Shown: in pieces, positions 5,555-59,761 of the stretch
How the letters are laid out: the number at the start of each line of letters is the position of its first letter
Position numbering within the stretch: the first letter of the stretch is position 1
Virus record (IMG/VR): IMGVR_UViG_3300023083_000001
Location: 124,001-188,000 of that record
Length of the DNA stretch: 64,000 nucleotides
Reading direction: 5' to 3' (one strand)
Made by a program: the position numbers and the translations under genes
Notes under the pieces: model-generated
Seen by the model: only the letters and a program-made list of their open reading frames with translations
Told to the model about the DNA's origin: nothing
Database searches by the model: none

Positions 5555-6304
5555 TTAAATGGCTTCCAGCTGATCGCCTGCCGCTGTGTAGGAATCGGTC
5601 ATGCTGGTGACCAAATGTTCGATATCGTCAGCCGATACGCCGAAGCCCAACGCTTCCAACTTCGCGTCTACTTCATCGGCGGTGTAGAACTCCGACAGCA
5701 GGATAGGTGGGTTATCCAGGAACGTCTGGGTCTTCTCACGAATCGCTGCCGCTACGTCGTACGTGGCGATGACGACTTCATTCATCCCGGTGACGTCAGT
5801 CGCAGGGTGGCCGTGAGGTAGAGGTGGGAACGTTTCAGGCTTGTCGCTGACCAGCTCGTAGCTGACCGAACGTGGGTCGACCAAACGATTCGACAGGATC
5901 TCGAGGATCGTGTTCTCGTCCAGTGTCCAGGTACCGCCAAGTGTTTGGTATTCGGTGAATTCGATCTGACCAGCGAGCGCTCGGTCGTAGAACAGAATAC
6001 TGGCGTAGATACCACCCTTCACGTTCTCGACTTCAAAGCTTGCCTGGATAAAACGGTGACCTGGCGCCCAGTCCGTACCACGCACCAACATACGCCCAGT
6101 CGTGGTATGTTTGATCTTCATCGAATCGCGGAAGAACGGTGTAGCAAATGGGATGACAAAATGGAAGTTGATCTCTCCATCGTTATCTTCAGGTGCAGGC
6201 GGTGGATTGAGTGTCTGTTTTTCACCTACGACTTTGTTAGTGGCCGCAGCCCCAGTCAGGTCAAGCGGATAAAGATAGGCTGTTACGTCTGTGGTGGCCA
6301 TCAT
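5555..6304 (-). CDS. Virion tail-associated protein, paralog of 534..1178
   Basis: YPLDLTGAAATNKV...PFF...PETFPPLPHGH; GGAG SD. Confidence 0.7.
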   Translation of the reverse strand: MMATTDVTAYLYPLDLTGAAATNKVVGEKQTLNPPPAPEDNDGEINFHFVIPFATPFFRDSMKIKHTTTGRMLVRGTDWAPGHRFIQASFEVENVKGGIYASILFYDRALAGQIEFTEYQTLGGTWTLDENTILEILSNRLVDPRSVSYELVSDKPETFPPLPHGHPATDVTGMNEVVIATYDVAAAIREKTQTFLDNPPILLSEFYTADEVDAKLEALGFGVSADDIEHLVTSMTDSYTAAGDQLEAI

Positions 6305-6319
6305 AGGTCTCCATTAAAA

Positions 6320-6366
6320 TATGGGACTCAGCGTGTATAACCTAAGACGCTGAGCATATCATTTTT
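6320..6366. promoter_or_regulatory. Putative face-to-face late promoters around a hairpin
   Basis: TATG on + at 6320-6323; inverted repeat CTCAGCGT/ACGCTGAG at 6327-6354; AAAAATGATATG on - (CATA at 6355-6358). TATG is the known phiKZ late-promoter motif. Confidence 0.45.
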
Positions 6367-6380
6367 CGATGAGGTGCAGT

Positions 6381-7637
6381 ATGTATACCTGCGTAAGAGC
6401 AATTGTTTGCCCACGTGGCGTAAACGCAAGATTCAGCGAGACGCAGGTGGGTGGCATCGCAGTACGTGACCTCCTCACTCAGAACATGTCCGTACAGTTG
6501 GTGTTGAAACATCCTGCAATTAATCACGAGGTAGGTTTGAACCTCACCACTGTCGCTGATTTGATCTACAGCATCAGACCCGACATTACGGTGAACGACT
6601 GGTTGTTTGCATTGGGGAATAAAACCCTCCCCACAACCGACACGGTCTTGAAGAAGACGGTCAGTCTGATTCGTTACAACGATGCGTTCATGGCAGGGTA
6701 TCACTTGAACCGTCAACATCCTTTGGCAGCAGCTGATTCGCAGCTACCTGATTCAGAATTGACTGACATCCTGATGACCAAGAATGGGATCACGTACAAA
6801 GAGCTTTATGAAAGCTGCCTGATCTCCGTCAACGGTCTTCTACACTTGACTGATTATTCCACACGTGGACTTCGGGTCAAGGACGCAGGGCAGTCAGTGC
6901 GGTATGCCAACAAGAACTCGATCGGCATGATCAGTTTCCGGGAAGTGGGCAAGTTGAGCTTCTTTCCTATTAAAGGAGATTCGCTCAAACCGTTCGCTAC
7001 CGATGCGCCCCTGAAGAATGGGTTCACCATTTCTCTTCCCAATGTCGATCTGTCAAACAAGATCGCAATGTTGTCAATTGGCGGTGTATTACATTTTGCC
7101 GATGACTGTTACCGCGTGACAGGCGATCATTCGATCCTGGTCGAATGGTGGAAGATTCCATTCGCTCATCGGTACTTTGACGCCGAACCTTTTATCGACA
7201 TGCGGACCTTCGAAGCCACGTTGGTGCGTAACCCACGTCACGGCAGCGCCTTGGACCTTGACCAAGCCATGACCGATGCATCTATCCGTGCCTACATGGA
7301 GCTGTCGCAAACATTCCTGATCCTGCTTGAGGCAGACCACTTCTATTACGAACGTCACGCCACAGAGATGACAGGGCTGCAAGGGCGGTACTACTCATAC
7401 GAGCGGCCTGACCTACCTCTGCAACTGGAGAATGGTTTCCTTCCACCGTACGTGGCTACACCTGAGAATGGCGTTTACGTGATTGCTCTGGACGACAACC
7501 TGATTCCCCGTTATGTCCATGACACCAAGCCAATTACTGACGATCATTACTTCAACAAAGCTAAACGTTCGTCTCGTCCCGGTTACTATTCAGCAGGGTA
7601 TCTGTTGGAGATGGGGCGTGAGTATTTGAGCGCCTAA
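6381..7637 (+). CDS. Conserved phiKZ-like virion structural protein (baseplate candidate)
   Basis: Long ORF; start moved to ATG 6381 behind GAGG SD; tail-gene context. Confidence 0.55.
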   Translation: MYTCVRAIVCPRGVNARFSETQVGGIAVRDLLTQNMSVQLVLKHPAINHEVGLNLTTVADLIYSIRPDITVNDWLFALGNKTLPTTDTVLKKTVSLIRYNDAFMAGYHLNRQHPLAAADSQLPDSELTDILMTKNGITYKELYESCLISVNGLLHLTDYSTRGLRVKDAGQSVRYANKNSIGMISFREVGKLSFFPIKGDSLKPFATDAPLKNGFTISLPNVDLSNKIAMLSIGGVLHFADDCYRVTGDHSILVEWWKIPFAHRYFDAEPFIDMRTFEATLVRNPRHGSALDLDQAMTDASIRAYMELSQTFLILLEADHFYYERHATEMTGLQGRYYSYERPDLPLQLENGFLPPYVATPENGVYVIALDDNLIPRYVHDTKPITDDHYFNKAKRSSRPGYYSAGYLLEMGREYLSA

Positions 7638-8765: not shown

Positions 8766-8836
8766 GGGGACTCCTGGAGTGTAATTTAACGAAGTAGCCT
8801 AATGTTACAGCCGAATGACCAAGGAGTCATCCAGAG

Positions 8837-11266: not shown

Positions 11267-11299
11267 CATACAGGGCGGGGAAACCCGCCCTGTATGCTA
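11264..11299. terminator. Perfect 16-bp hairpin with GAAA loop (CATA..TATG type)
   Basis: TAGCATACAGGGCGGG-GAAA-CCCGCCCTGTATGCTA, with no U-tract. Confidence 0.7.
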
Positions 11300-13811: not shown

Positions 13812-13896
13812 CTCAACGAACGAGCGGCAAAAGGTATGATGTTAACCAGAGTATAAATATACACCGGACAGTCCTAAACTATATTATTTTTCGAGA

Positions 13897-16774: not shown

Positions 16775-16812
16775 CATACATGGGAGGTGGACAAAGCCAC
16801 CTCCCATGTATG
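16775..16812. terminator. Bidirectional 16-bp hairpin (CATA..TATG type)
   Basis: CATACATGGGAGGTGG-ACAAAG-CCACCTCCCATGTATG between convergent genes, with no U-tract. Confidence 0.7.
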
Positions 16813-24588: not shown

Positions 24589-24630
24589 CAGCATACAGCC
24601 CCGGCCTTGGCCGGGGCTGTATGTCGTTTA
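24586..24630. terminator. Bidirectional CATA..TATG hairpin; near-copy of 59715-59761
   Basis: TGACAGCATACAGCCCCGGCC-TTG-GCCGGGGCTGTATGTCG. Confidence 0.75.
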
Positions 24631-33272: not shown

Positions 33273-33326
33273 AATGCGTCTCTCTTTATGGGGTGACACT
33301 GTTCATACAACTTGGAGGGAAGCGTC

Positions 33327-35006
33327 TTGAAAACTGACATGCTGCCTGCTATACTTTGGATTCTGCATGCGAGTGACGATGACCTTAAACACATCGCAAC
33401 CATTACTCGCCTCGATATCTTCGAAGGTGCGACGACTGACTTTCACGATGACGGTTTGTTCTCGACTCGAATCTTTGGCGTCATTGGCTCTGATAGCCGT
33501 GATCAGGTATACGGTAAGATCAATCTGGGTGTCGAGATTCTCCATCCAAAGATCTACCGCGACCTGACGTCTTTGCGTGAGCTGTACAAACACATTCTCG
33601 ACGGTACCGCCATGGCCAAGTTTGATTCGGCCATTGGTGACTTCTACCCTAGTACCGATGAAGATGCGCAGACTGGTTATTCGTTCTTCATGACCAACCT
33701 GCCAAAGCTTGTGCTTAAACGCAACAAGTCTCCAGCACGTAATGAACGTATCAACTTCATCGAGCGGTGGCGTCACCGCATGACCATGAAGAATGCGATC
33801 GTGATGCCAGCCGGTTTGCGTGACATCGAAGTCGATGATACTGGACGTCCTACGAAGAACGAGATCAACGATCTCTACTTCAAGCTGTTGGCTATCAGTA
33901 AGAACGTTGTTGTGTCCAAAGACATGAACTCACCGGCTTACGATCAGATCCGTCGTTCTCTGACGGCGACGATGTACGAGATCTACAAGTACATCGAACG
34001 GATCATTGGCGGTAAGGACGGCTTCCTGAAAGACAACTGGGCTAGCCGCCGGGTGCGTGAAGGTACACGTAACGTACTGACCTCGATGAACACCTCCGGT
34101 AGTAACCTGGATGCGCCTAACGTACCTGGTTTTGATTGCACCACCTTGGGTGTGTATCAGGCAGCGACGTCATTGGCGCCATTGGTTATCCACTGGCTGC
34201 GGCGCGGCTTCCTTGAGAAGATCATGACAGCGGGTGAAGGTGACATCCCTCTGGTCAACACCAAGACCTTGAAACCTCACTGGGTTAGCCTAACACCTTA
34301 CGAGCGAGATCGCTGGTCGACTGAGGATGGTCTGCGAGATGTGATCAATACCTTGGTGGATGTGGAAGCACGTCATCGACCTGTGATCATCGGCGGTTGC
34401 TACCTGGCGTTGGTGTATAACGGTAAAGGTACATTCCGGGTCTTTGATGACATCGAGGATCTGCCAAGCAACCTGAGCGCTACCGACGTTCATCCGTTGA
34501 CGCTGATGGAGCTGATCTACCTGTGTGGCTACTCGAAGTGGAGCAAGTACTTCACTGACGTTGTGCGGTATCCGATCACGGGCGATGACTCCACCTACCC
34601 TTCTCGCATTTACGTCAAGTCGACTTCGGTCGGTGAGATCCGGCGTGAGTTGGACAGCAACTGGCTGGAACTGCCTGGCGATGAGTTCCTCGTTACCGAA
34701 TACCCGAAACAAGGTCTGACCACCTACCATGAGTCCGAGTCTCCTCACCCGTCTCGCTTGAACGGTCTGGGTGCTGACTTTGACGGTGACACCGGTAGTG
34801 CTACATCGATCATGGTCAATGATTCTCTGCGTGAAACTGAAGCGTACCTGAAGACTCGTGTGGCCTGGATCACTCCTTCTGGCCGGATGCGCGCAAGCGT
34901 TGTCTACGATACTTCTGAATTAGTTGTTCGTAACTTGACTGGGCGATTCAATCACGTCGTCCAGGCGAAGGACATCATGAAACAAGTTGGCGTTACTCAG
35001 GCGTAA
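33327..35006 (+). CDS. Virion RNA polymerase beta' subunit (phiKZ gp180-like)
   Basis: DGLFS.RIFG, catalytic GADFDGD, RYP; TTG start at 33327 behind GGAGGG. Confidence 0.92.
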   Translation: MKTDMLPAILWILHASDDDLKHIATITRLDIFEGATTDFHDDGLFSTRIFGVIGSDSRDQVYGKINLGVEILHPKIYRDLTSLRELYKHILDGTAMAKFDSAIGDFYPSTDEDAQTGYSFFMTNLPKLVLKRNKSPARNERINFIERWRHRMTMKNAIVMPAGLRDIEVDDTGRPTKNEINDLYFKLLAISKNVVVSKDMNSPAYDQIRRSLTATMYEIYKYIERIIGGKDGFLKDNWASRRVREGTRNVLTSMNTSGSNLDAPNVPGFDCTTLGVYQAATSLAPLVIHWLRRGFLEKIMTAGEGDIPLVNTKTLKPHWVSLTPYERDRWSTEDGLRDVINTLVDVEARHRPVIIGGCYLALVYNGKGTFRVFDDIEDLPSNLSATDVHPLTLMELIYLCGYSKWSKYFTDVVRYPITGDDSTYPSRIYVKSTSVGEIRRELDSNWLELPGDEFLVTEYPKQGLTTYHESESPHPSRLNGLGADFDGDTGSATSIMVNDSLRETEAYLKTRVAWITPSGRMRASVVYDTSELVVRNLTGRFNHVVQAKDIMKQVGVTQA

Positions 35007-35033: not shown

Positions 35034-38000
35034 ATGGCCGAATTGTTACCCATTGAGAGTTATAATCGGCGCTTCAGTCTGTTTAAAACCAGCCAACTGG
35101 ATGCGCCGGTGGTTTATCCGATTGCACGGATCAGCCTGCCCAAACTCTCTGCTCTGCATTTCGTGACATTGGATGGCGTGACTGTAGGTCCTCAGTCCTC
35201 TGATCCTCTGATGCGATCGATCCCTGGTGTGGTGTACGTCGACCACTTGACAACGTACCACTCACCGATCGGTAACCCGATCAAAGCTTTCACCAGTCCA
35301 GATGCATTGATCAACAACTATCGTCGTGTCAACCGTGCCTTCAGACCTCTGCGTAACTTGGATCGTCTGGAAACTGACACACGGTCGTTGGTGATCTTCA
35401 ACTACTCGATCCTGGCGCATGTTGTTAAATACGCCTTGAGCTTTCGGGCCAGTTACTTTGCCTGGTACAACGTTTATAAGGAAGTGGTCACCAACGTCAA
35501 TCGGATTGCTGAAATCAGCAACCGTAATCAGTTTATCGAGATCAACCTGCCTGACCGCATTCCTTCGCTCAGTGATCTGCGCGAATACGCGGTGCGGCAA
35601 ACCAGCGACACGTTGGGCAAGTTCCGTTCTCCTGAGTTGAAGACGTTTGCTGATCTGTTCATGTGGGCAGGTAAAACACGCAACGCCAGTCTGCTGGGTA
35701 AGATCGATCCTAAACACTACAGCAAGGTCAACTTGCTGGTTCGTCGTTTGAATGGTTGGGTCGTGATCAATCTGGGTTGGCTGGATCAGTTCCGCAAAGG
35801 TGATGAAGTCAGTCTGGAGTCCAAGCTTGAGTCTGCGGTCGATATCACTAAGTCCCTGGAAACCCTGGGTTTTGAATCGGTCGACTATTCGGTTGAAGCG
35901 GTTAACATGGCGCCACAGTTGTTTCAGCTGCGTATGCTGAAAATGCTGACGGTCATTCATCAGGCCACCAGTCCAATTGCGACACAGACTGCGGCTAACG
36001 TCATTGACGAACCTCTGGTTGAGAACAACCTGGATGATGACGAGAAGATCGACGCACTAGATCTCTCATTCCAAGATGAACCTTACGTTCCTGAAAGTGA
36101 TGAGTTGGGGGATGATGAACTCAGCTTGGCGGCTCTTGAGAAAGAGTTGGAAGAACTGGACCACATCAAGGAACTGAGTCAGGGCGTTGAATCAATTGAC
36201 GATGACGATAACGTAGTCGATGCCAAGTCTGTCGACGTGGACATGTTCAGCCAGAATGGTGGGATTGTTGCGAAGGAAGGCGAAGCACTGATCCGTAAGG
36301 CTGATGAGCTGGCTGCCCAAGGATTGTTGACGCCGGCTGAATGGCGGCGTCTGATGCGTGTGTCGGAAGTCTTTGAGAACCTCCCTAACCCTTACGGCGG
36401 TGGTGAGACAATCAAGGAAGGCATGGTTACCAGTCAAGAGGATATCCTGATCAAACCTGAGGTCTTAACGACCGATGCGGTGGTGACGGACAAGTCTCTG
36501 GCCAGTAGCCGTGTTGACATCATGGAACGTCAGTACATCGACAAGGTCCTCAAGAAAGACATCCTGCGCTGCGTGACGTCCATGCAGAAAGCGGCGGTGG
36601 CGATCACGGGTTACTCGATTGACCGTTTCACGGATTTGACCAACGACAAAGAAACCCACACTGTCCGGTTCACTCCGGTGGTCGGTGTCCCATCTACCAT
36701 CAAGTTCGACATTCCGGTTCTAAAGCCTGACGGTACGTTCCTGTACAACGGCACCAACTACCGCATGCGTAAGCAACGGTCGGACTTGCCAATCCGTAAG
36801 GTCTCTCCAACACGGGTTGCTTTGTCAAGCTACTACTCGAAGGTCTTTGTCGAAAGGTCTGAGCGTAAGACATTCAACTATGGCAAATGGCTGATCGATC
36901 GTTTGATCATCAAATGCCAGGACCGTGAAGATCCGTACGTCTCTGACGCTGTGGTTCGTCGCGCGGTCGATCGCAAGGCCGATGTCCCGTTGATGTACTC
37001 GACCATCGCTGAGCGGATTGCATCCTTTAAGGTTGGTGGTTTGCAGCTGTGGTTTGATTACCGTCAGCGTGTCGAGAAGTTTGATTACACCAAAGAAGAA
37101 CGTGCGTTCGAGAAGAAGGGTTGGGTACTGTGTGGTCGTGAGACTTCAGGTCAAGCGCTGATCATGGACCCAAGCGGTATGATCTATCGGATCATCCCTG
37201 ACGCTCAAGGTGGTACGGCTCACGAACTCGATACGATTGAATCGCTGACCGGCTTGGATACAGCGGACACACCAACCTACATGGCGGAGATGAAGATCTA
37301 CTCCAAAGCTATTCCGGTGGGTGTGGGTCTGGCTTACCTGTTGGGCTTGAGCGGCTTGATAGAATTGGTGGGTGTGCAGCCACGTCGTGTTCCTGTGGGT
37401 GAACGTCTGAACACTCAGGCGGATGAGTTTGCAATACGCTTTAAGAACGAATCGTTGTTGTTCAAACGCAGTGACATGAAAGCCATGATGTTGTTCAGTG
37501 GCTTTAACCTGTACCACGCTCTGGTCCGTACCTACGACGTCGATCTGTTTGATCAGAAAGATGTTTACAGTGCAATCTTTGACCGGGCAGGTGTGGGTAG
37601 TCGTTACCTGCGTGAGATCGACTCGCTCAACACGTTGTTCGTCGACCCTATCACGGAAGATCTATTGAAGTGGATGAAGGAACCTACCACTTACGTCGGC
37701 CTGTTGGTTCGTTCTGTGGAAATGCTGGTCAACGATACGGTCAAGGCCCGTCGGGTAGATCGTGATGGTCTGGTAGAAAGTCTGGAACGTGTACGTGGTT
37801 ACGAACGTGTTGCTGGTGTGGTGTATGAAACGTTGTCTAAGGCTGTGCGTTTGTATAACGCTCGGGCCAGTACCGGTAAGTCTTCGGTGCAGGTCAATCC
37901 AAACGACACGATGAACACCATCATCCAGGATCCAACCACTTCACCTGTCAACAACATCAACCCTATCCACGCCTTGCGTGAACGGGAAGTGATCACCTTC

Positions 38001-39377
38001 GGTGGTCGTGGTGGTCGTAGTCGTCGGGCGATGGTTGCATCGACGCGTTTGTTTACCGATGAAGACATGGGCTTTATCTCCGAAGGTACGGTTGACTCTG
38101 GTGACGTGGCTATTATCACTTACCTGTCTCCGAACTCGAACGTGACGTCAGTACGCGGTACGGTGCGGATGTATGACGCCAAACGTGACGGTGCTTCGTC
38201 GATCATGTCCACTGCGGCTCTGCTGAGTTTTGGTGCAGACGGCGATGATCCGAAACGTGTGAACTTTATCACAGTGCAACACGGCCACGGGATTCAATCG
38301 GCTGGTGGTGAAGTGCAGGGCGCTCGGACGGGTATGGAGCGAGTCATTGCTTCCAGGATGACGCCTGAGTTTGCCACGACTGCTAAAGGTCCTGGTGAAA
38401 TCACAGAGCTGTCAGAGAACCACTTGGTAGTAACGTACAAGGACGGTGTCATCGATCGTTTCCCATTGGGTCTGCTACACACGAGCGCTGAGGGTTCTAC
38501 TTACCCGAACACGATCAAGACCGGTTTGAAGTTGGGTGACAAGGTTGAGCAGTATGACGTCATGACTTACAACGCCGGGTTCTTCAAACCAAGTTCTATC
38601 GATAAACGTCGTGTGGACTACATGAACGGTTGCGTAGGTCGGGTAGCACTTCGTGAAGCAACGTACACCGTAGAAGACAGTAGTTCTTTGGCGGTAGCGT
38701 TCGCTCAACGGATGACTACGTTGGTGTCCAAGCCTAAAACGATCATCGTTGATTTCCGTGAAGGTGTGGAAGGGTTGGTTAAAGTCGGCGATAAGGTTGA
38801 CCTTGATACAATTCTATGCACCATCCAGGGCGCTGTTTCGTCTGATGCTGGCCTCTATGACGATGCGACTCGCGAGACTCTGGCACGTTGGGCTGCGATG
38901 GCTCCAAGAGCCAAAGCTGTCGGGGTGGTTGCCAAGATCGATGTCATGTACAACGGTGACATTGACGACATGTCGGAAACCTTGCAGGTCATCGCATCGG
39001 AATCTGAACGTGAACGCAAACGTTCCGCCAGGCGCTTGGGTGAGGAATATCGCACCGGTCAAGTACCACGTCAAGTCAGGATCGATGGGCATAATCTGGA
39101 ACGTGACCAGGCTATCATCATGGTTTACATCACCACTCCTGTTGCCATGGGTATCGGCGATAAGCTGGTGATTGCTAATCAGATGAAGAGTACCGTCGGT
39201 GAGATCCTCTTTGGAGACAACCGAACAGTAGAAGGTGAGACGATCGATCTGATCTTCGGAGCCAAGTCTTGCGTCGACCGGATTGTTACCAGTCCTTTCA
39301 CGATCGGTACAACCAACACTGTCCTGCGGTTCATCGGGGAAGAAGCCTTCAAGATGTATTTTGAAGGTAAAGAGTAA
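35034..39377 (+). CDS. Virion RNA polymerase beta subunit, N-terminal part (phiKZ gp178-like)
   Basis: DGTFLYNG, EGTVDSGDV, DDPKR, TGME, EDS, GDKL...QMKSTVG, IDLIF; uninterrupted. Confidence 0.92.
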   Translation: MAELLPIESYNRRFSLFKTSQLDAPVVYPIARISLPKLSALHFVTLDGVTVGPQSSDPLMRSIPGVVYVDHLTTYHSPIGNPIKAFTSPDALINNYRRVNRAFRPLRNLDRLETDTRSLVIFNYSILAHVVKYALSFRASYFAWYNVYKEVVTNVNRIAEISNRNQFIEINLPDRIPSLSDLREYAVRQTSDTLGKFRSPELKTFADLFMWAGKTRNASLLGKIDPKHYSKVNLLVRRLNGWVVINLGWLDQFRKGDEVSLESKLESAVDITKSLETLGFESVDYSVEAVNMAPQLFQLRMLKMLTVIHQATSPIATQTAANVIDEPLVENNLDDDEKIDALDLSFQDEPYVPESDELGDDELSLAALEKELEELDHIKELSQGVESIDDDDNVVDAKSVDVDMFSQNGGIVAKEGEALIRKADELAAQGLLTPAEWRRLMRVSEVFENLPNPYGGGETIKEGMVTSQEDILIKPEVLTTDAVVTDKSLASSRVDIMERQYIDKVLKKDILRCVTSMQKAAVAITGYSIDRFTDLTNDKETHTVRFTPVVGVPSTIKFDIPVLKPDGTFLYNGTNYRMRKQRSDLPIRKVSPTRVALSSYYSKVFVERSERKTFNYGKWLIDRLIIKCQDREDPYVSDAVVRRAVDRKADVPLMYSTIAERIASFKVGGLQLWFDYRQRVEKFDYTKEERAFEKKGWVLCGRETSGQALIMDPSGMIYRIIPDAQGGTAHELDTIESLTGLDTADTPTYMAEMKIYSKAIPVGVGLAYLLGLSGLIELVGVQPRRVPVGERLNTQADEFAIRFKNESLLFKRSDMKAMMLFSGFNLYHALVRTYDVDLFDQKDVYSAIFDRAGVGSRYLREIDSLNTLFVDPITEDLLKWMKEPTTYVGLLVRSVEMLVNDTVKARRVDRDGLVESLERVRGYERVAGVVYETLSKAVRLYNARASTGKSSVQVNPNDTMNTIIQDPTTSPVNNINPIHALREREVITFGGRGGRSRRAMVASTRLFTDEDMGFISEGTVDSGDVAIITYLSPNSNVTSVRGTVRMYDAKRDGASSIMSTAALLSFGADGDDPKRVNFITVQHGHGIQSAGGEVQGARTGMERVIASRMTPEFATTAKGPGEITELSENHLVVTYKDGVIDRFPLGLLHTSAEGSTYPNTIKTGLKLGDKVEQYDVMTYNAGFFKPSSIDKRRVDYMNGCVGRVALREATYTVEDSSSLAVAFAQRMTTLVSKPKTIIVDFREGVEGLVKVGDKVDLDTILCTIQGAVSSDAGLYDDATRETLARWAAMAPRAKAVGVVAKIDVMYNGDIDDMSETLQVIASESERERKRSARRLGEEYRTGQVPRQVRIDGHNLERDQAIIMVYITTPVAMGIGDKLVIANQMKSTVGEILFGDNRTVEGETIDLIFGAKSCVDRIVTSPFTIGTTNTVLRFIGEEAFKMYFEGKE

Positions 39378-46682: not shown

Positions 46683-46732
46683 CATACATCGGGGGAGCAA
46701 TCCCCCGATGTATGCTCCATCTTTATTTTTTG
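46683..46732 (+). terminator. 14-bp CATA..TATG hairpin plus delayed U-tract
   Basis: CATACATCGGGGGA-GCAA-TCCCCCGATGTATG...CTTTATTTTTT. Confidence 0.75.
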
Positions 46733-49060: not shown

Positions 49061-49927
49061 TTACGGTGTAACCAGTTGACGCTTGAGGTTGACGATCTGC
49101 TCGCTGTAACCAACGTTGCTGATCGCCGTGACATTGCTGTCCACCGCAGAGATGAAGTTCGGCTGGTACTGAGGATCGATACCGGTAACACGAACAGCGT
49201 CCATGAACGATTGAGCCAGCTTGTCCACCGCGTAACCCACTTTCTGCCAGCCAGTCCAGGTCAGGTTGTAGGTGACGGTTTCGCCGTCTGCCTGCATTTG
49301 ACGCGAACCAGTGTTCTCACCGATGTCGCCAGTGATCCAGAAGTTGGTGATCAGCCAAGCGCGCTGAACTTTACGGAAGGTCTTGTCTGGCTCGTAAGCC
49401 AAGATAGTACCGCCGTACATGTCGGCCAGCTGGTCGGTGAATGCGTCGGTTACGCCAGAAAGCAGCGCATGGCCAACGTCAGGGTCACCAATCAGGTAAC
49501 GCGTCATGTCTTCCAGGAAGCGGATGACCGGCATGTTGTCTTTCTCAACAACGGTGCTGGTGATCTGCGAACGTGCACGGGATACACGGGACGGAGTCTG
49601 GAAGACCTCGCCTGCTTGACCCAGCTGCGTTTCCTGGTTAGCAACGTTCAACGTCTTGTTGAAGCCAGTCCAAGACTGCATCATGTTTTCGATGAGGTTC
49701 TTGTACGCCGCGATGTACTCGGTGGCGTTTGGCATCAACGTCAGGCCAACCGGCGCCTGCAAGACCTTGATGATCATCGGCTTACGGATGTAGTCCGTGG
49801 CCGACGGGTAATACGCCAGGTCCGTGATGTAACCATTCTGACCCTGGACACCCAGGTTAGTGATCGGCATCTGGGCGTTTTTGGCGTACGCTTTGTTCGC
49901 GATCTGCGTATCCTTATAGCGTGCCAT
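49061..49927 (-). CDS. Tail tube protein (phiKZ gp30-like)
   Basis: 288 aa directly after the sheath gene (TAATG overlap, GAGGAGG SD); EPD...V.RAWLITN motif. Confidence 0.85.
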   Translation of the reverse strand: MARYKDTQIANKAYAKNAQMPITNLGVQGQNGYITDLAYYPSATDYIRKPMIIKVLQAPVGLTLMPNATEYIAAYKNLIENMMQSWTGFNKTLNVANQETQLGQAGEVFQTPSRVSRARSQITSTVVEKDNMPVIRFLEDMTRYLIGDPDVGHALLSGVTDAFTDQLADMYGGTILAYEPDKTFRKVQRAWLITNFWITGDIGENTGSRQMQADGETVTYNLTWTGWQKVGYAVDKLAQSFMDAVRVTGIDPQYQPNFISAVDSNVTAISNVGYSEQIVNLKRQLVTP

Positions 49928-52005
49928 TATGCAGCCTCCTCAGTCCGGCGACGTTGAGCAATGATCGCCAGATTTTCAACTGTGCGGATGTTCTCGCCAG
50001 CCATTGCGATATCCAGGTGCCATGGGAAGCCCAACGCTTCGTCCAACGCGGTGTAGTAGGCATTCGGGGTAACATCAACCCGATTGTCATACTTACCGGT
50101 GGTCTTGACGGTGACCTTGTCGTTGACCATGTCCAGGAACTGGTCATCGGTCAGTTGCGAATCGCCTGACATTTCACGCCACACGATGTTGCCGATGCGG
50201 GTGAGGTTGCACGCGATCTGCACGTTGAGGTACGAATGCAACACCGAAGTGTGGTCTTCGTAGATCGACTGCATGCCAGCCCAGAACAGACGGGACATGT
50301 CGTAGAACTCAGCGTAGTTCAGGCCGTTAGCCCAATCGGTGTTACGCACGCTGTCGTCGCGAGTGGTCGCGTTGTGGTTGCGATAACGCGTGACGATGTT
50401 TTGCTCACCACGACCGAAGGCGTAGGTGTTGTTCATCTCGCCGTTCTCAGCGCCCATGTAACGAGCACCCAGGATGAGAATGAATTCCAGGAACGGAACC
50501 AGGCCATCGTAGTTGTCGTTGATCAGGTAGCCGGCGTTCGAGAACATCGCAACGCGGCACGCCTTGGTGCCGAACTCAGCCGATTCCGAGATTGCACGGA
50601 AGTGCGAGCGCAGCGTAACGGCGATCGACGCATCTTGCGATGGCGTGTTGATCGCTTTGCTCACGTCCTGTGTGCAAACGTGTGGATACACGTCTGGACG
50701 CAGCGCCAGGAAGTTCGCAAACTTCTTCTTGGTGTCCACAGGGAAACCCGAGTCCCAGATCGAATCGTACGGCATGCGCGCGATGTTCTTGAACGGGATT
50801 TCAGACGTAGCAACGCCGTCGAGCATTTCGTCGAACACGGTGTTGAAGTTAGCTGCGGAGACGTCACCGTCAGCACCGCCCACCATGTAGTGGTTGCTCA
50901 TCTCGCCGAACAACAGACCGCCTTGCGCAGGACCTTCAACAACGAAGGTAGCGTAAGGGTTGCCGTTGATGTCAACGCCGGTCAGGAAGTTGAACAGGTT
51001 GACGTCAGCAAACTCTTCACCGGTGTGCGCAGCTTCGAGAGCAGCGAACTTGGTGAGCATTTCTGCGATTTCGTCGTTGTAGACGTGGATCTTTTCGAAC
51101 GGACCGAAACCGGTGAAGTTAGCTTCATCAGTCGATTCGTACGAAGGGATGATCTTCTTGTCCACGTAGAACTCGACTTCGGTATCGAGGTCGATAGTCC
51201 CTTTCTTGAACGAGAAGTCCACGAAGCCATCGCCACCCAGGGTACGAGTAACCTGTGCAGTCGATTTGGCCGAAGCGCGGCTAACCACTTGCATGCGATA
51301 CAAGAACGCACCCAGGGTTTCTTGCAGCTCTTCGTCAGCAGCATCGACGCTGTTGATGGTCGGTGCGATCAGACGGAAACCGAGGTTGTCGCCCTTACCG
51401 CCAACGAAGCGAGCCAGCACGTCGGACACCGGCGTCTGTACAGACAGGCTACCGTCTGCGGCAACCATCGTGCCTTCAGTGGTGTTAGCCGAACCAAAGC
51501 TCGAGGTTGGGTCTTCAGCAGAAACCGGACCGATGGCCACTTTACGCCACTGAGCACGGATACCCGGAATGGTTTCGCCGGTAGGGATCTTCTCACCCTG
51601 TGCGTTCAGCTTCAGGCTGTTATCGCCGTTACGCTCGTACAGTGGAACCACGTCTTCAACGTAGTCCAACACAAGACGAGCACCCGACTGCTTAGCACCC
51701 GGTGCGCGCAGACCCACGAACAGACATTTGCCGCCGGCAGTAAAGTGCGAGCGGATGAACTGCGATTGGTGGGTGAAGAAGGGAGACTTCGGATTGAGGA
51801 TCTCGCCACCGTACAGCAGAGTGAGCGAAGAAGCATCCACGTAGCGAGCACGGTTGGTTTCACCCCAAGGAGCGAAACTTGCAAACAAAGGAAGACGAAT
51901 CGGTAGAGACTCGGACGGCATGGCGATGTTAACCGCCCCCTCGTCCTTAATGCCTCGGAACTCAGTCCTTGGCAAAGAGCTGTAAGCACTTACATTGGTG
52001 GACAT
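49927..52005 (-). CDS. Tail sheath protein (phiKZ gp29-like)
   Basis: 692 aa; GIKDEG...LP.F, GG.DG, WDSGFP..TK; strong codon bias; synteny. Confidence 0.9.
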   Translation of the reverse strand: MSTNVSAYSSLPRTEFRGIKDEGAVNIAMPSESLPIRLPLFASFAPWGETNRARYVDASSLTLLYGGEILNPKSPFFTHQSQFIRSHFTAGGKCLFVGLRAPGAKQSGARLVLDYVEDVVPLYERNGDNSLKLNAQGEKIPTGETIPGIRAQWRKVAIGPVSAEDPTSSFGSANTTEGTMVAADGSLSVQTPVSDVLARFVGGKGDNLGFRLIAPTINSVDAADEELQETLGAFLYRMQVVSRASAKSTAQVTRTLGGDGFVDFSFKKGTIDLDTEVEFYVDKKIIPSYESTDEANFTGFGPFEKIHVYNDEIAEMLTKFAALEAAHTGEEFADVNLFNFLTGVDINGNPYATFVVEGPAQGGLLFGEMSNHYMVGGADGDVSAANFNTVFDEMLDGVATSEIPFKNIARMPYDSIWDSGFPVDTKKKFANFLALRPDVYPHVCTQDVSKAINTPSQDASIAVTLRSHFRAISESAEFGTKACRVAMFSNAGYLINDNYDGLVPFLEFILILGARYMGAENGEMNNTYAFGRGEQNIVTRYRNHNATTRDDSVRNTDWANGLNYAEFYDMSRLFWAGMQSIYEDHTSVLHSYLNVQIACNLTRIGNIVWREMSGDSQLTDDQFLDMVNDKVTVKTTGKYDNRVDVTPNAYYTALDEALGFPWHLDIAMAGENIRTVENLAIIAQRRRTEEAA

Positions 52006-52024: not shown

Positions 52025-52119
52025 TGTTCTGCGCAGAACAGTGAAATCGAGGAATGTTATGGCCAGCAAACTCCAGCCAGGCGTATAGCCTAACATGTGG
52101 AGTCAGCATAGTATTTTTT
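52025..52119. promoter_or_regulatory. Divergent control region: 16-bp palindrome and face-to-face TATG motifs
   Basis: TGTTCTGCGCAGAACA at 52025-52040; GAATGTTATG on + (TATG 52058); AAAAAATACTATG on - (CATA 52107-52110). Confidence 0.45.
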
Positions 52120-59717: not shown

Positions 59718-59761
59718 CAGCATACAGCCCCGGCCGTGAAGCCGGGGCTGTATGTCGCTTA
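59715..59761. terminator. Bidirectional CATA..TATG hairpin; near-copy of 24586-24630
   Basis: TGACAGCATACAGCCCCGGCC-GTGAA-GCCGGGGCTGTATGTCG. Confidence 0.75.

What the first reader, a model, noticed from the sequence alone, without database searches (positions are those of the whole stretch)
6320..6366. Face-to-face TATG motifs bracketing a hairpin at a divergent junction
Seen: the + TATG (6320) lies left of the - TATG (6358), with an 8-bp inverted repeat between them. Known: phiKZ late promoters have TATG at the start site. Inference: the two divergent mRNAs overlap by about 30 nt at their 5' ends and each begins with the same hairpin. The same geometry recurs at 13835/13883 (TATA variant), 33287/33307 and 52058/52110, and three of these carry GTATA in the overlap. 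This may couple or mutually repress divergent structural operons.
Basis: partly seen in the sequence, partly recalled or inferred. Interest (0 to 1): 0.6.

Follow-up and report, generated by a model that had tools for sequence, protein, structure and literature searches.

The report
Facing TATG late promoters sharing hairpin
Between two oppositely oriented virion genes of an uncultured phiKZ-like giant phage, two phiKZ-type TATG start motifs point at each other across a small hairpin. The layout is commoner than chance and conserved in relatives, so it is probably a compact two-way late promoter, but no RNA data exist to prove the start sites.

Summary
In detail: +TATG at 6320-6323, an 8-bp stem (6327-6334 / 6347-6354), and -TATG (CATA) at 6355-6358. 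These lie in the 76-bp spacer between a gp131-like tail gene (leftward) and a gp130-like structural gene (rightward) of a complete 258-kb phiKZ-like phage from leaf litter.

It is not chance. Seven of 18 divergent spacers in this genome have a +TATG left of a CATA, against 1.4-1.5 expected from shuffles. TATG ranks first of 240 4-mers for this layout, also outside the window. Six relatives pooled give 20 against 11.3 (P=0.004).

In 17 relatives of this junction (45-71% protein identity), AAAATnATATG on the - strand is invariant and the + TATG is kept in 16. The hairpin between them changes sequence but persists. On the leftward RNA it starts at +1 or +2 in 14 of 16.

Best reading: overlapping face-to-face late promoters, with predicted starts 32 bp apart, and a 5'-terminal stem-loop serving mainly the tail operon. 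The leftward promoter is well supported. The rightward one is less so, because it is absent in some clades, and the + TATG at 33287 is specific to this genome.

GTATA in the loop is not conserved. Mutual repression is untested, and no RNA runs exist. This is a new variant of known kinds.

The parts
5555..6304 (-). Leftward gene, gp131-like tail (tail-tip) protein and first gene of a leftward tail operon. The start is ATG 6304 or, more likely, 6301.
   Evidence: PHROG phrog_2163/13857. Synteny with phiKZ PHIKZ131 'tail tip protein'. Relatives align on the CAT at 6299-6301.
6306..6312 (-). Shine-Dalgarno sequence of the leftward gene (GGAGACC on the - strand).
   Evidence: Sequence; conserved in 17 relatives.
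6320..6323 (+). Rightward TATG, candidate late promoter/initiator with predicted +1 at G6323. This gives a 58-nt leader to ATG 6381.
   Evidence: It is an island of invariance (CATA columns in A2, 16 of 17 sequences) flanked by variable columns.
6327..6354 (.). Inverted repeat: 8-bp arms 6327-6334 and 6347-6354 with a 12-nt loop 6335-6346. It forms a hairpin in both predicted RNAs.
   Evidence: Stems differ between relatives but persist; the loop is not conserved.
6355..6358 (-). Leftward TATG, candidate late promoter/initiator with predicted +1 at 6355. This gives a 51-54-nt leader, and the stem-loop starts at +1.
   Evidence: Invariant in all 27 distinct relatives examined. A TATG is also present at the orthologous place in DT01, LucasX, Xoo-sp14, PA7 and phiKZ.
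6359..6366 (-). A-tract upstream of the leftward TATG (AAAAATGA on the - strand). On the + strand it is the T-run ahead of the rightward gene's ribosome-binding site.
   Evidence: AAAATnATATG is invariant in alignment A2.
6371..7637 (+). Shine-Dalgarno GAGGTG (6371-6376) and the gp130-like virion structural gene (ATG 6381).
   Evidence: phrog_3337; homologues annotated as structural proteins; PHIKZ130.
13835..13883 (.). Second face-to-face pair: +TATG 13835-13838 and TATA 13880-13883 (- strand).
   Evidence: The + TATG block GCGGCRAAAGGTATGA is conserved in G002 and G003. The right-hand motif is TATA in this genome and G003 but a true TATG in G002, and a different hairpin lies between the motifs in each genome.
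33287..33307 (.). Third pair: +TATG 33287-33290 and -TATG 33304-33307, with predicted starts 14 bp apart. It lies between the gp181-like giant tail protein gene and a virion RNA polymerase beta gene.
   Evidence: Only the - TATG (GTTCATACAACTT) is conserved in relatives; the + TATG is specific to this genome.
52058..52110 (.). Fourth pair: +TATG 52058-52061, imperfect hairpin (ACTCCA 52070-52075 / TGGAGT 52098-52103) and -TATG 52107-52110, upstream of the tail sheath gene (49927-52005, -).
   Evidence: Both TATGs and a sequence-variable hairpin are conserved in G002, G003 and L182-L194.

Best explanation
Positions 6320-6366 are the core of a compact two-way late-promoter region between two divergent virion genes of a phiKZ-like phage. 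Each strand carries a phiKZ-type TATG initiator, which in phiKZ is recognised by the phage's non-virion RNA polymerase and starts transcription at the G. The two motifs face each other, with predicted +1 sites 32 bp apart (6323 on + and 6355 on -). The leftward tail-operon mRNA and the rightward gp130-like mRNA would therefore be complementary over their first 33 nt. This shared segment is a palindrome, so each RNA starts with a stem-loop. On the leftward RNA the stem begins at nucleotide +1, the position at which 5'-terminal stem-loops protect bacterial mRNAs from 5'-end-dependent decay. The geometry probably arises because this promoter type needs almost nothing upstream of the start, while each mRNA needs a leader of 30 nt or more. 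In spacers of 50-130 bp, each start is thus pushed towards the neighbour's ribosome-binding site. Likely consequences are steric exclusion or transcriptional interference between the two polymerases and possible duplex formation between the two 5' ends. Shown: the sequence anatomy, its enrichment, its conservation and the persistence of the hairpin. Inferred: that the TATGs are start sites, that the hairpin acts at RNA level, and any interference.
For: Anatomy. Enrichment of the face-to-face order only at divergent spacers: 7/18 vs 1.4-1.5 expected. TATG ranks 1 of 240 4-mers, also in held-out spacers. Six relatives pooled give 20 vs 11.3 (P=0.004), and for spacers of 130 nt or less 10 vs 2.8, while the back-to-back order is not enriched. 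Sense TATG peaks 30-40 nt upstream of start codons in both tandem and divergent spacers, whereas sense CATA 10-30 nt upstream is seen only at divergent ones, so it belongs to the neighbour's promoter. Conservation at this junction: AAAATnATATG (- strand) is invariant in 17/17 and the + TATG is kept in 16/17 amid variable flanks. A hairpin is present in nearly every relative with different stem sequences (A-U vs G-C 7:7 at pair 5; 75% of cells paired vs 26-56% in slid controls). The - RNA version is as stable or more stable in most relatives, and its stem starts at +1/+2 in 14/16. Orthologous phiKZ junction: a TATG sits upstream of gp131, followed at +1 by a small palindrome. The sheath junction (52058/52110) and the 13835 junction keep both motifs plus a variable hairpin in G002 and G003. 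phiKZ late promoters are TATG with +1 at G, necessary but not sufficient, with downstream sequence important (PMC4666361, PMC12809450). The genome encodes several split RNA polymerase beta/beta'-like genes. A strain variant (X2) has no change in 6261-6529, against about 1% elsewhere.
Against: No transcript data exist for this phage, and TATG is only 4 bp. The + TATG is absent at this junction in the G002-like clade, L065, DT01, Xoo-sp14 and PA7/phiKZ. The + TATG also lies in the leftward mRNA's leader next to its Shine-Dalgarno sequence, so its conservation could serve that RNA. In single relatives the face-to-face excess is not significant. RNAalifold found no common-register structure on the MAFFT alignment, and the shuffle control of the named helix was not significant (54/500). 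phiKZ P119L, the model late promoter, has no facing CATA or hairpin downstream. TATG also occurs as the 3' flank of terminator hairpins and inside a second promoter-like motif, so the 4-mer has other roles in this genome.
Confidence: 0.55

Rival explanations
1. Only the leftward (- strand) TATG at 6355-6358 is a promoter, for the tail operon, and the hairpin is its 5'-terminal stem-loop. The + TATG at 6320 is conserved as part of that mRNA's leader, between the hairpin and the Shine-Dalgarno sequence. The rightward gene is transcribed from somewhere else.
For: The - TATG is universal, from this clade to phiKZ, while the + TATG is missing in several clades. The hairpin is thermodynamically better on the - RNA in most relatives and starts at its +1. 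At 33287 the + TATG is not conserved. At 52058 the + TATG sits inside a longer conserved block of the sheath leader.
Against: Within the 45-71% identity clade the four TATG bases are kept in 16/17 sequences, while the 7-9 nt between them and the Shine-Dalgarno sequence vary in sequence and length. The genome-wide and cross-genome excess of the face-to-face order needs both motifs. The rightward structural gene has no other non-coding DNA upstream and no other promoter-like motif there.
Confidence: 0.25
2. The palindrome with its A- and T-rich flanks is a promoter-proximal attenuator or two-way insulator. The hairpin followed by CAUAUCAUUUUU (+) or CCCAUAUUUUAAU (-) would stop part of the transcripts early, producing short 5' RNAs like those reported in phiKZ leaders.
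For: The layout is symmetric: A-run, hairpin, T-run. Short, prematurely terminated leader RNAs are described for phiKZ (PMC10914365). The phiKZ gp131 leader holds a hairpin followed by TTTTATT, which resembles the phiKZ terminator motif.
Against: This phage's own terminators are stereotyped: GC-rich stems directly followed by (C/T)T(G/T)TATG, seen in 11 of 18 convergent spacers. The junction hairpin is instead followed by CATAT in both directions, with the T-run 7-9 nt away. The pattern scan finds no terminator here. Stem stability is moderate (-9 to -13 kcal/mol).
Confidence: 0.07
3. The element acts at DNA level. The palindrome, possibly extruded as a cruciform, or the ATATG...CATAT dyad is a binding site for a regulator or for the polymerase itself, rather than an RNA structure.
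For: Dyad symmetry includes the conserved outer arms GACTC...GAGC and both TATGs. Loops of several relatives contain an extra TAT[AG]. The 14-bp palindrome GTTCTGCGCAGAAC in the sheath leader is conserved in sequence, which suggests operators exist in these regions.
Against: The spacing between the two TATGs varies from 26 to 36 nt among relatives, and inner stems change freely, which fits a structural rather than a sequence-specific requirement. Pairs that would be G.U in the - RNA are mismatches in DNA and in the + RNA, which argues for selection on RNA.
Confidence: 0.08
4. Chance: two 4-mers and a short inverted repeat happen to fall in an AT-richer spacer.
For: 4-mers are frequent. In individual related genomes the excess is not significant. 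Two face-to-face cases outside the window flank non-structural genes and have no conservation data.
Against: No shuffle reached the observed count. TATG is the top-ranked 4-mer, also in held-out data. The excess replicates in six other genomes. The motifs are invariant across relatives at 45-71% protein identity.
Confidence: 0.03

Closest known systems
phiKZ late promoters (non-virion RNA polymerase, 5'-TATG-3' with +1 at the G; P119L is the model)
   Same: Same 4-bp motif, located upstream of virion genes in a phiKZ-like genome that encodes split beta/beta'-like polymerase genes. The orthologous phiKZ junction (gp130<-|->gp131) has a TATG at the corresponding place. There is no conserved upstream consensus, as in phiKZ.
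   Different: Start sites are not mapped here. P119L has no facing TATG and no hairpin downstream. In this clade an A-tract (AAAATnATATG) accompanies the leftward motif, and a TATA variant seems tolerated at 13883.
Face-to-face (convergent, overlapping) promoter pairs of temperate coliphages: 186 pR/pL (62 bp apart) and P2 Pe/Pc, the classic cases of transcriptional interference (own knowledge; see PMC6593788, PMC3675496)
   Same: Two promoters on opposite strands whose transcripts overlap at their 5' ends within tens of bp, so polymerases must exclude or collide with each other.
   Different: Those are sigma-70 promoters forming a lysis/lysogeny switch with repressors. Here both genes are virion genes, presumably of one temporal class, read by a non-canonical phage polymerase, and no interference has been measured.
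Overlapping 5' UTRs of divergent bacterial genes, processed by RNase III (PMC3551857)
   Same: Divergent genes whose mRNAs share a complementary 5' segment.
   Different: The overlap here is short (15-47 nt), palindromic, and recurs at several junctions of one phage.
5'-terminal stabilising stem-loops (ompA-type leaders; own knowledge: Emory, Bouvet and Belasco 1992)
   Same: A stem that begins at or within 1-2 nt of the predicted 5' end of the leftward mRNA in 14 of 16 relatives.
   Different: Stabilisation is not tested, and the position depends on the unproven start site.
phiKZ-type intrinsic terminators (GC hairpin followed by TTAT[G/T]; bioRxiv 10.1101/2023.10.13.562163)
   Same: A hairpin flanked by TATG/CATA motifs. 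The same 4-mer is used in this genome's terminators.
   Different: The order is opposite. Terminators are CATA-hairpin-TATG (motifs pointing outward) at convergent or tandem gene ends. The finding is TATG-hairpin-CATA (pointing inward) at a divergent junction, with a weaker, AT-richer stem.

Membership tests
phiKZ-type late promoter | 5'-TATG-3' on the non-template strand | tested here: met
   6320-6323 (+) and 6355-6358 (-). All four bases are conserved in relatives.
phiKZ-type late promoter | Transcription starts at the G of TATG | not testable with these tools
   No RNA run holds this phage. The start-site tables of the phiKZ and 201phi2-1 studies are not held.
phiKZ-type late promoter | Lies upstream of late (virion) genes | tested here: met
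   Tail protein and structural protein families. The orthologues PHIKZ131 and PHIKZ130 are annotated as structural. Face-to-face pairs elsewhere in the genome also flank a DprA-like gene and a ribonucleotide reductase gene.
phiKZ-type late promoter | The phage encodes a phiKZ-like multisubunit non-virion RNA polymerase | tested here: inconclusive
   Beta-like genes lie at 33327-35006 and 35034-39377 (phrog_2986, phrog_3148). Further Rpb2_6-like and Rpb1_2-like reading frames lie outside the window. I did not assign them to the virion or non-virion set, and I did not look for the gp68 or gp123 homologues specifically.
phiKZ-type late promoter | A TATG at the orthologous position in phiKZ itself | tested here: met
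   This holds for the leftward (gp131-side) motif only: CCTATGTGAATTTCAC lies 63 nt upstream of the gp131 ATG. phiKZ has no counterpart for the rightward motif.
Face-to-face interfering promoter pair (186 pR/pL, P2 Pe/Pc type) | Two active promoters on opposite strands with overlapping transcripts | not testable with these tools
   The geometry is met if both TATGs are starts (32 bp between +1 sites). Activity is unproven.
Face-to-face interfering promoter pair (186 pR/pL, P2 Pe/Pc type) | Activity of one promoter lowers that of the other | not testable with these tools
   This needs reporter or in vitro assays.
phiKZ-type intrinsic terminator | GC-rich hairpin directly followed by TTAT[G/T] / (T)TATG | tested here: not met
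   The hairpin is followed by CATAT on both strands, and the T-run starts 7-9 nt after the stem. The terminator scan finds none. Canonical examples in this genome look different.
phiKZ-type intrinsic terminator | Located downstream of a gene end | tested here: not met
   It lies between two gene starts, and the synteny is kept in all relatives.
5'-terminal stabilising stem-loop | Stem begins within about 0-2 nt of the mRNA 5' end | tested here: met
   This is conditional on the predicted start. The first paired nucleotide is +1 or +2 in 14 of 16 relatives on the - RNA, while the + RNA has 4 unpaired nucleotides first.
Rfam RNA families | Match at gathering score | tested here: not met
   No family matches anywhere in the window.

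The most novel reading that the evidence does not exclude
The inward-facing TATG pair with an intervening palindrome is a functional unit of the non-virion RNA polymerase's promoter code. The downstream palindrome, or the opposing TATG, would supply the missing 'downstream determinant' that makes a 4-bp TATG a real late promoter. The polymerase would choose one direction per initiation event, so that two divergent virion operons are set in a fixed ratio by a single shared element, possibly through a transient cruciform that exposes TAT[AG] in the loop, by analogy with N4 hairpin promoters.
Probability: 0.1. Interest if true: 0.75.

Novelty: new variant of a known kind. Interest (0 to 1): 0.5.

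Why it matters
The field's open question is what, beyond four bases, defines a late promoter for the phiKZ non-virion RNA polymerase. In phiKZ, TATG is necessary but not sufficient, and downstream sequence matters without any visible consensus (PMC4666361, PMC12809450). A conserved, recurrent layout would give concrete templates for in vitro transcription and structural work. That layout is two inward-facing TATGs, 14-47 bp apart, often around a hairpin whose sequence is free but whose presence is kept. It would also predict built-in interference, or fixed ratios, between divergent virion operons in nucleus-forming jumbo phages. In addition, it shows that late promoters of uncultured jumbo phages can be located by comparative genomics, although the review literature says middle and late promoters cannot be predicted bioinformatically (PMC7598289). 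If only the leftward promoter is real, the result is still a well-defined late promoter plus 5' stem-loop for the tail operon, conserved from this clade to phiKZ.

Tried and rejected
- RNA evidence: the single run search found only three DNA metagenome runs (leaf litter) and no RNA. Laying their contigs showed no variant in 6261-6529, which fits constraint but tells nothing about covariation.
- Published start-site tables: the supplements of the phiKZ and 201phi2-1 ONT-cappable-seq papers are not held, nor is Ceyssens 2014. I could therefore not check whether facing starts are already listed for phiKZ.
- Megablast of the region against phage records gave nothing. The first single-protein scan of viral contigs also gave nothing. 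Alignment-based scans succeeded later.
- RNAalifold on the MAFFT alignment predicted no consensus structure, because the stems are not in one register. The named Q-type helix is 75% paired, but its shuffle control is not significant. I therefore rest the hairpin claim on per-sequence folds.
- GTATA as a shared element was rejected as a conserved feature. It is absent from relatives at all three junctions. The longer TTAGGYTATAC match between two loops is specific to this genome.
- The facing CATA/hairpin as a general requirement of late promoters was rejected for phiKZ P119L, which has neither.
- Canonical terminator and sigma-70 promoter readings of the junction: none found.
- Rfam: no hit.
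- The face-to-face excess in single relatives (DT01, LucasX, Xoo-sp14, PA7, G002, G003) is individually not significant. Only the pooled test is.
- Gene calls used for the statistics are my own heuristic (codon-usage scoring plus ribosome-binding-site start refinement), not a curated annotation. Some spacers over 300 nt hold missed genes and were excluded.

Full report
**Source and context.** The window is bases 124001-188000 of a single 258,357-bp contig. The contig is classed as complete with direct terminal repeats and comes from a leaf-litter metagenome. Its GC content is 50.7%. PHROG matches identify a tail sheath, a gp181-like 2219-aa tail protein with a transglycosylase domain, split RNA polymerase beta-like genes and an SbcC-like gene. 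These, together with synteny to phiKZ, mark it as a phiKZ-like (nucleus-forming type) jumbo phage. Annotated phages are distant, with under 40% identity in the sheath. Metagenomes hold relatives at 41-71% protein identity.

**The observation.**
- TATG at 6320-6323 on the + strand.
- Stem arms CTCAGCGT at 6327-6334 and ACGCTGAG at 6347-6354, with loop GTATAACCTAAG.
- CATA at 6355-6358, which is TATG on the - strand.
- A T-run at 6362-6366.

The element sits in the 76-bp spacer between a leftward gene (5555-6304; tail protein, the orthologue of phiKZ gp131) and a rightward gene (ATG 6381 behind GAGGTG; the orthologue of phiKZ gp130, a structural protein). The three other sites are also as stated. 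The hairpin is stable for its size: -13.5 kcal/mol with z -4.2 on the + RNA, and -12.3 kcal/mol with z -3.0 on the - RNA.

**Is it more than chance?** I called genes over the whole genome with a heuristic (codon-usage scoring plus ribosome-binding-site start refinement) and classified the intergenic regions.

| Spacer type (300 nt or less) | Pattern | Observed | Expected from dinucleotide shuffles |
|---|---|---|---|
| Divergent (n=18) | +TATG left of CATA (face-to-face) | 7 | 1.4-1.5 (no shuffle of 1000 reached 7) |
| Divergent (n=18) | CATA left of TATG (back-to-back) | 3 | 1.5 |
| Tandem | face-to-face | 8 | 7.2 |
| Convergent | face-to-face | 3 | 1.4 |

Using real sequence as the control, TATG ranks first of the 240 non-palindromic 4-mers for this arrangement. 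It stands ahead of the CTCC/GGAG pair that the two ribosome-binding sites create, and it ranks first again in the 12 divergent spacers outside the window (4 of 12).

Six other genomes give an independent test: DT01, LucasX, Xoo-sp14, PA7, and two complete IMG/VR relatives G002 and G003. No single genome is significant. Pooled, they show 20 face-to-face cases against 11.3 expected (P=0.004). For spacers of 130 nt or less the figures are 10 against 2.8 (P<0.001), and back-to-back pairs are again at expectation.

Sense-strand TATG peaks 30-40 nt upstream of start codons in both tandem and divergent spacers. A sense-strand CATA 10-30 nt upstream appears only at divergent ones, so it is the neighbour's TATG rather than a feature of the gene's own leader.

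**Other contexts of the 4-mer.** TATG has at least two more roles in this genome, and these must be kept apart from the finding.
- The terminators are GC-rich hairpins whose base reads CATAC...GTATG or which are followed by (C/T)TTATG. They occupy 11 of 18 convergent spacers here and 9-13 in every relative. This matches the published phiKZ terminator motif of a hairpin plus TTAT[G/T]. In terminators the motifs point outward, which is the opposite of the finding.
- A conserved 15-mer, TACAGTCAYACATT, with TTAA and TTGAA blocks around it, occurs at 18 intergenic sites, all on the + strand and 36-67 nt upstream of starts. It looks like a separate promoter class, probably early, and sometimes contains CATA.

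**Comparative evidence at this junction.** The divergent arrangement is syntenic in every relative, from 71% identity down to phiKZ. I aligned 17 distinct sequences of the 45-71% clade in - strand orientation (alignment A2). The invariant columns fall in three places:
- AAAATnATATG, which is the leftward TATG with an A-tract.
- The four columns of the rightward TATG, kept in 16 of 17 sequences; L065 has TGTG.
- The leftward Shine-Dalgarno sequence.

The 7-9 nt between the rightward TATG and that Shine-Dalgarno sequence vary in sequence and length. The 26-36 nt between the two TATGs are the most variable part. Nearly every sequence nevertheless folds into a hairpin there, with different stems: CTCAGCGT/ACGCTGAG, CTCAGC/GCTGAG, CCTCAA/TTGAGG, GGCGTC/GACGCC, ACCCTG/CAGGGT, CGACA/TGTCG and GCCA/TGGC.

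On the alignment, the Q-type helix is 75% paired against 26-56% for slid controls, and one pair splits 7 A-U to 7 G-C. The shuffle control is not significant, and RNAalifold finds no common register. The structure is therefore conserved in kind rather than in exact position.

Two asymmetries point to the leftward RNA as the main object of selection. Its version of the hairpin is as stable or more stable in most relatives, because pairs that are G.U in it are C.A in the other strand. Its stem also begins at +1 or +2 of the predicted transcript in 14 of 16 sequences.

The leftward TATG is also present next to the rightward gene's ribosome-binding site in the 41% clade, DT01, LucasX, Xoo-sp14, PA7 and phiKZ. 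In phiKZ it is followed at +1 by the small palindrome GTGAATTTCAC. The rightward TATG is absent from the 41% clade, DT01, Xoo-sp14 and PA7/phiKZ, and present in LucasX, L125 and L126.

**The other three junctions.**
- 52058/52110 (tail sheath): both TATGs, their flanks (GAGGAATKKTATGGYC and AAAATASTATGC) and a sequence-variable hairpin are conserved in G002, G003 and nine further contigs.
- 13835/13883: the + TATG block is conserved in G002 and G003. The right-hand motif is TATA in this genome and G003 but a true TATG in G002, so the 'TATA variant' is a plausible orthologue. Each genome has its own hairpin between the motifs.
- 33287/33307: only the - strand TATG, upstream of the gp181-like gene, is conserved. 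The + TATG is TATAAG or absent in relatives.

A further face-to-face junction at genome position 230167-230251 is conserved in G003. Two others, at 2680 and 34221, flank a DprA-like gene and a ribonucleotide reductase gene and have no conservation data. GTATA in the overlap is not conserved anywhere.

**Mechanism.** In phiKZ the late promoter is TATG with the G as +1. [quoted passage not shown] All four bases are required, nothing conserved lies upstream, and the downstream 50 bp matter about 30-fold without any visible consensus. Transferring this to the present phage gives +1 at 6323 (+) and 6355 (-). That implies a 33-nt complementary overlap, leaders of 58 and 51-54 nt, and the hairpin at the very 5' end of the leftward RNA.

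The simplest cause of the geometry is economy. A promoter that needs nothing upstream, serving mRNAs that need a leader of 30 nt or more, ends up facing its neighbour whenever the spacer is shorter than two leaders. This fits the stronger excess in spacers of 130 nt or less. Polymerases at starts 14-32 bp apart would clash, so some mutual exclusion or interference is a reasonable inference, as in the face-to-face promoters of phages 186 and P2. Nothing here measures it.

I put 0.55 on both TATGs being start sites with the hairpin acting at RNA level. I put 0.25 on only the leftward promoter being real, and small weights on attenuator, DNA-level and chance readings.

**What is known and what is new.** TATG late promoters, terminator hairpins with TTAT[G], face-to-face interfering promoters, overlapping 5' UTRs and 5'-terminal stabilising stem-loops are all established. 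I found no report of inward-facing, overlapping TATG promoters in jumbo phages, but the start-site tables that could show them are not held. I therefore rate this a new variant of known kinds. phiKZ P119L has neither a facing CATA nor a hairpin, so the layout is not a general requirement for late promoters.

**Limits.**
- There are no transcript data.
- The gene calls are heuristic.
- The relatives are not phylogenetically independent.
- The discovery window contributes 3 of the 7 cases; the held-out and cross-genome tests address this.

Noticed in passing
window 11267-11296, 16775-16812, 24592-24623, 46683-46714, 59721-59754 (and about 20 more in the genome): Stereotyped two-way terminator-like hairpins: a GC-rich stem of 8-12 bp whose base reads CATACAG...CTGTATG(C). 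Stems differ between copies while the CATAC/GTATG flanks are fixed. They fill 11 of 18 convergent spacers here and 9-13 in each of six relatives, matching the phiKZ terminator motif (hairpin + TTAT[G/T]). Many single hairpins followed by YTTATGC sit 20-40 nt upstream of the next gene's start, so the same TATG might double as the next gene's start site.
   Followed up: partly
window 11311, 44073, 45167, 61035, 62235 (+ strand); 18 intergenic sites genome-wide: A conserved motif TTAA-N(~6)-TACAGTCAYACATT-N(~7)-TTGAAC lies only on the + strand, 36-67 nt upstream of start codons for most sites. It looks like a separate, strongly conserved promoter class, probably early (virion RNA polymerase). The variant with T contains CATA and so confounds simple TATG/CATA counts.
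   Followed up: partly
window 8766-8836: The next divergent junction (baseplate/PAAR-neighbour gene <-|-> SbcC-like gene) has no TATG. It carries a bipartite motif, ATTTAAC-N9-10-YAATRNTACAG, conserved in seven relatives. This resembles the phiKZ middle-promoter AAanTTAC element.
   Followed up: no
window 52026-52039: A perfect 14-bp palindrome, GTTCTGCGCAGAAC, lies in the tail-sheath leader between the + TATG and the sheath ribosome-binding site. It is conserved in sequence, not by compensatory change, in all relatives (one mismatch in the G002 clade). It is a candidate operator or RNA-protein site.
   Followed up: no
window 6335-6345 and 52083-52093 (- strand TTAGGYTATAC); also near 67905: The loops of two different promoter-proximal hairpins share an 11-mer (TTAGGTTATAC / TTAGGCTATAC), and a third leader has TTAAGGTATAC. 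About 0.07 exact intergenic matches are expected. The motif is absent from relatives at the same junctions, so it is specific to this genome and unexplained.
   Followed up: partly
L062, L065, L066, L110, L067 (junction-1 relatives), loop of the hairpin: The hairpin loops of several relatives contain an extra TATG or TATA on the + strand (6 of 16 distinct sequences, including this genome's GTATAA). This is more than a 10-nt loop should hold by chance. Its meaning is unknown.
   Followed up: no
window 33327: The virion RNA polymerase beta-like gene most likely starts at a TTG behind GGAGGG. The TTG and its context (GCGTCTTGAAA) are conserved in relatives.
   Followed up: no
window 61094 (approx.): A short reading frame starts at ATG behind a strong GGAGG, downstream of the TACAGTCATACATT motif, in a 291-bp 'spacer'. 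It is probably an uncalled small gene.
   Followed up: no
L195 16418-16482 (phiKZ 134417-134481): The phiKZ gp131 leader holds, after the TATG, a hairpin ACGCTA...TAGCGT followed by TTTTATT. This resembles the phiKZ terminator motif inside a 5' UTR and may be a leader attenuator.
   Followed up: no
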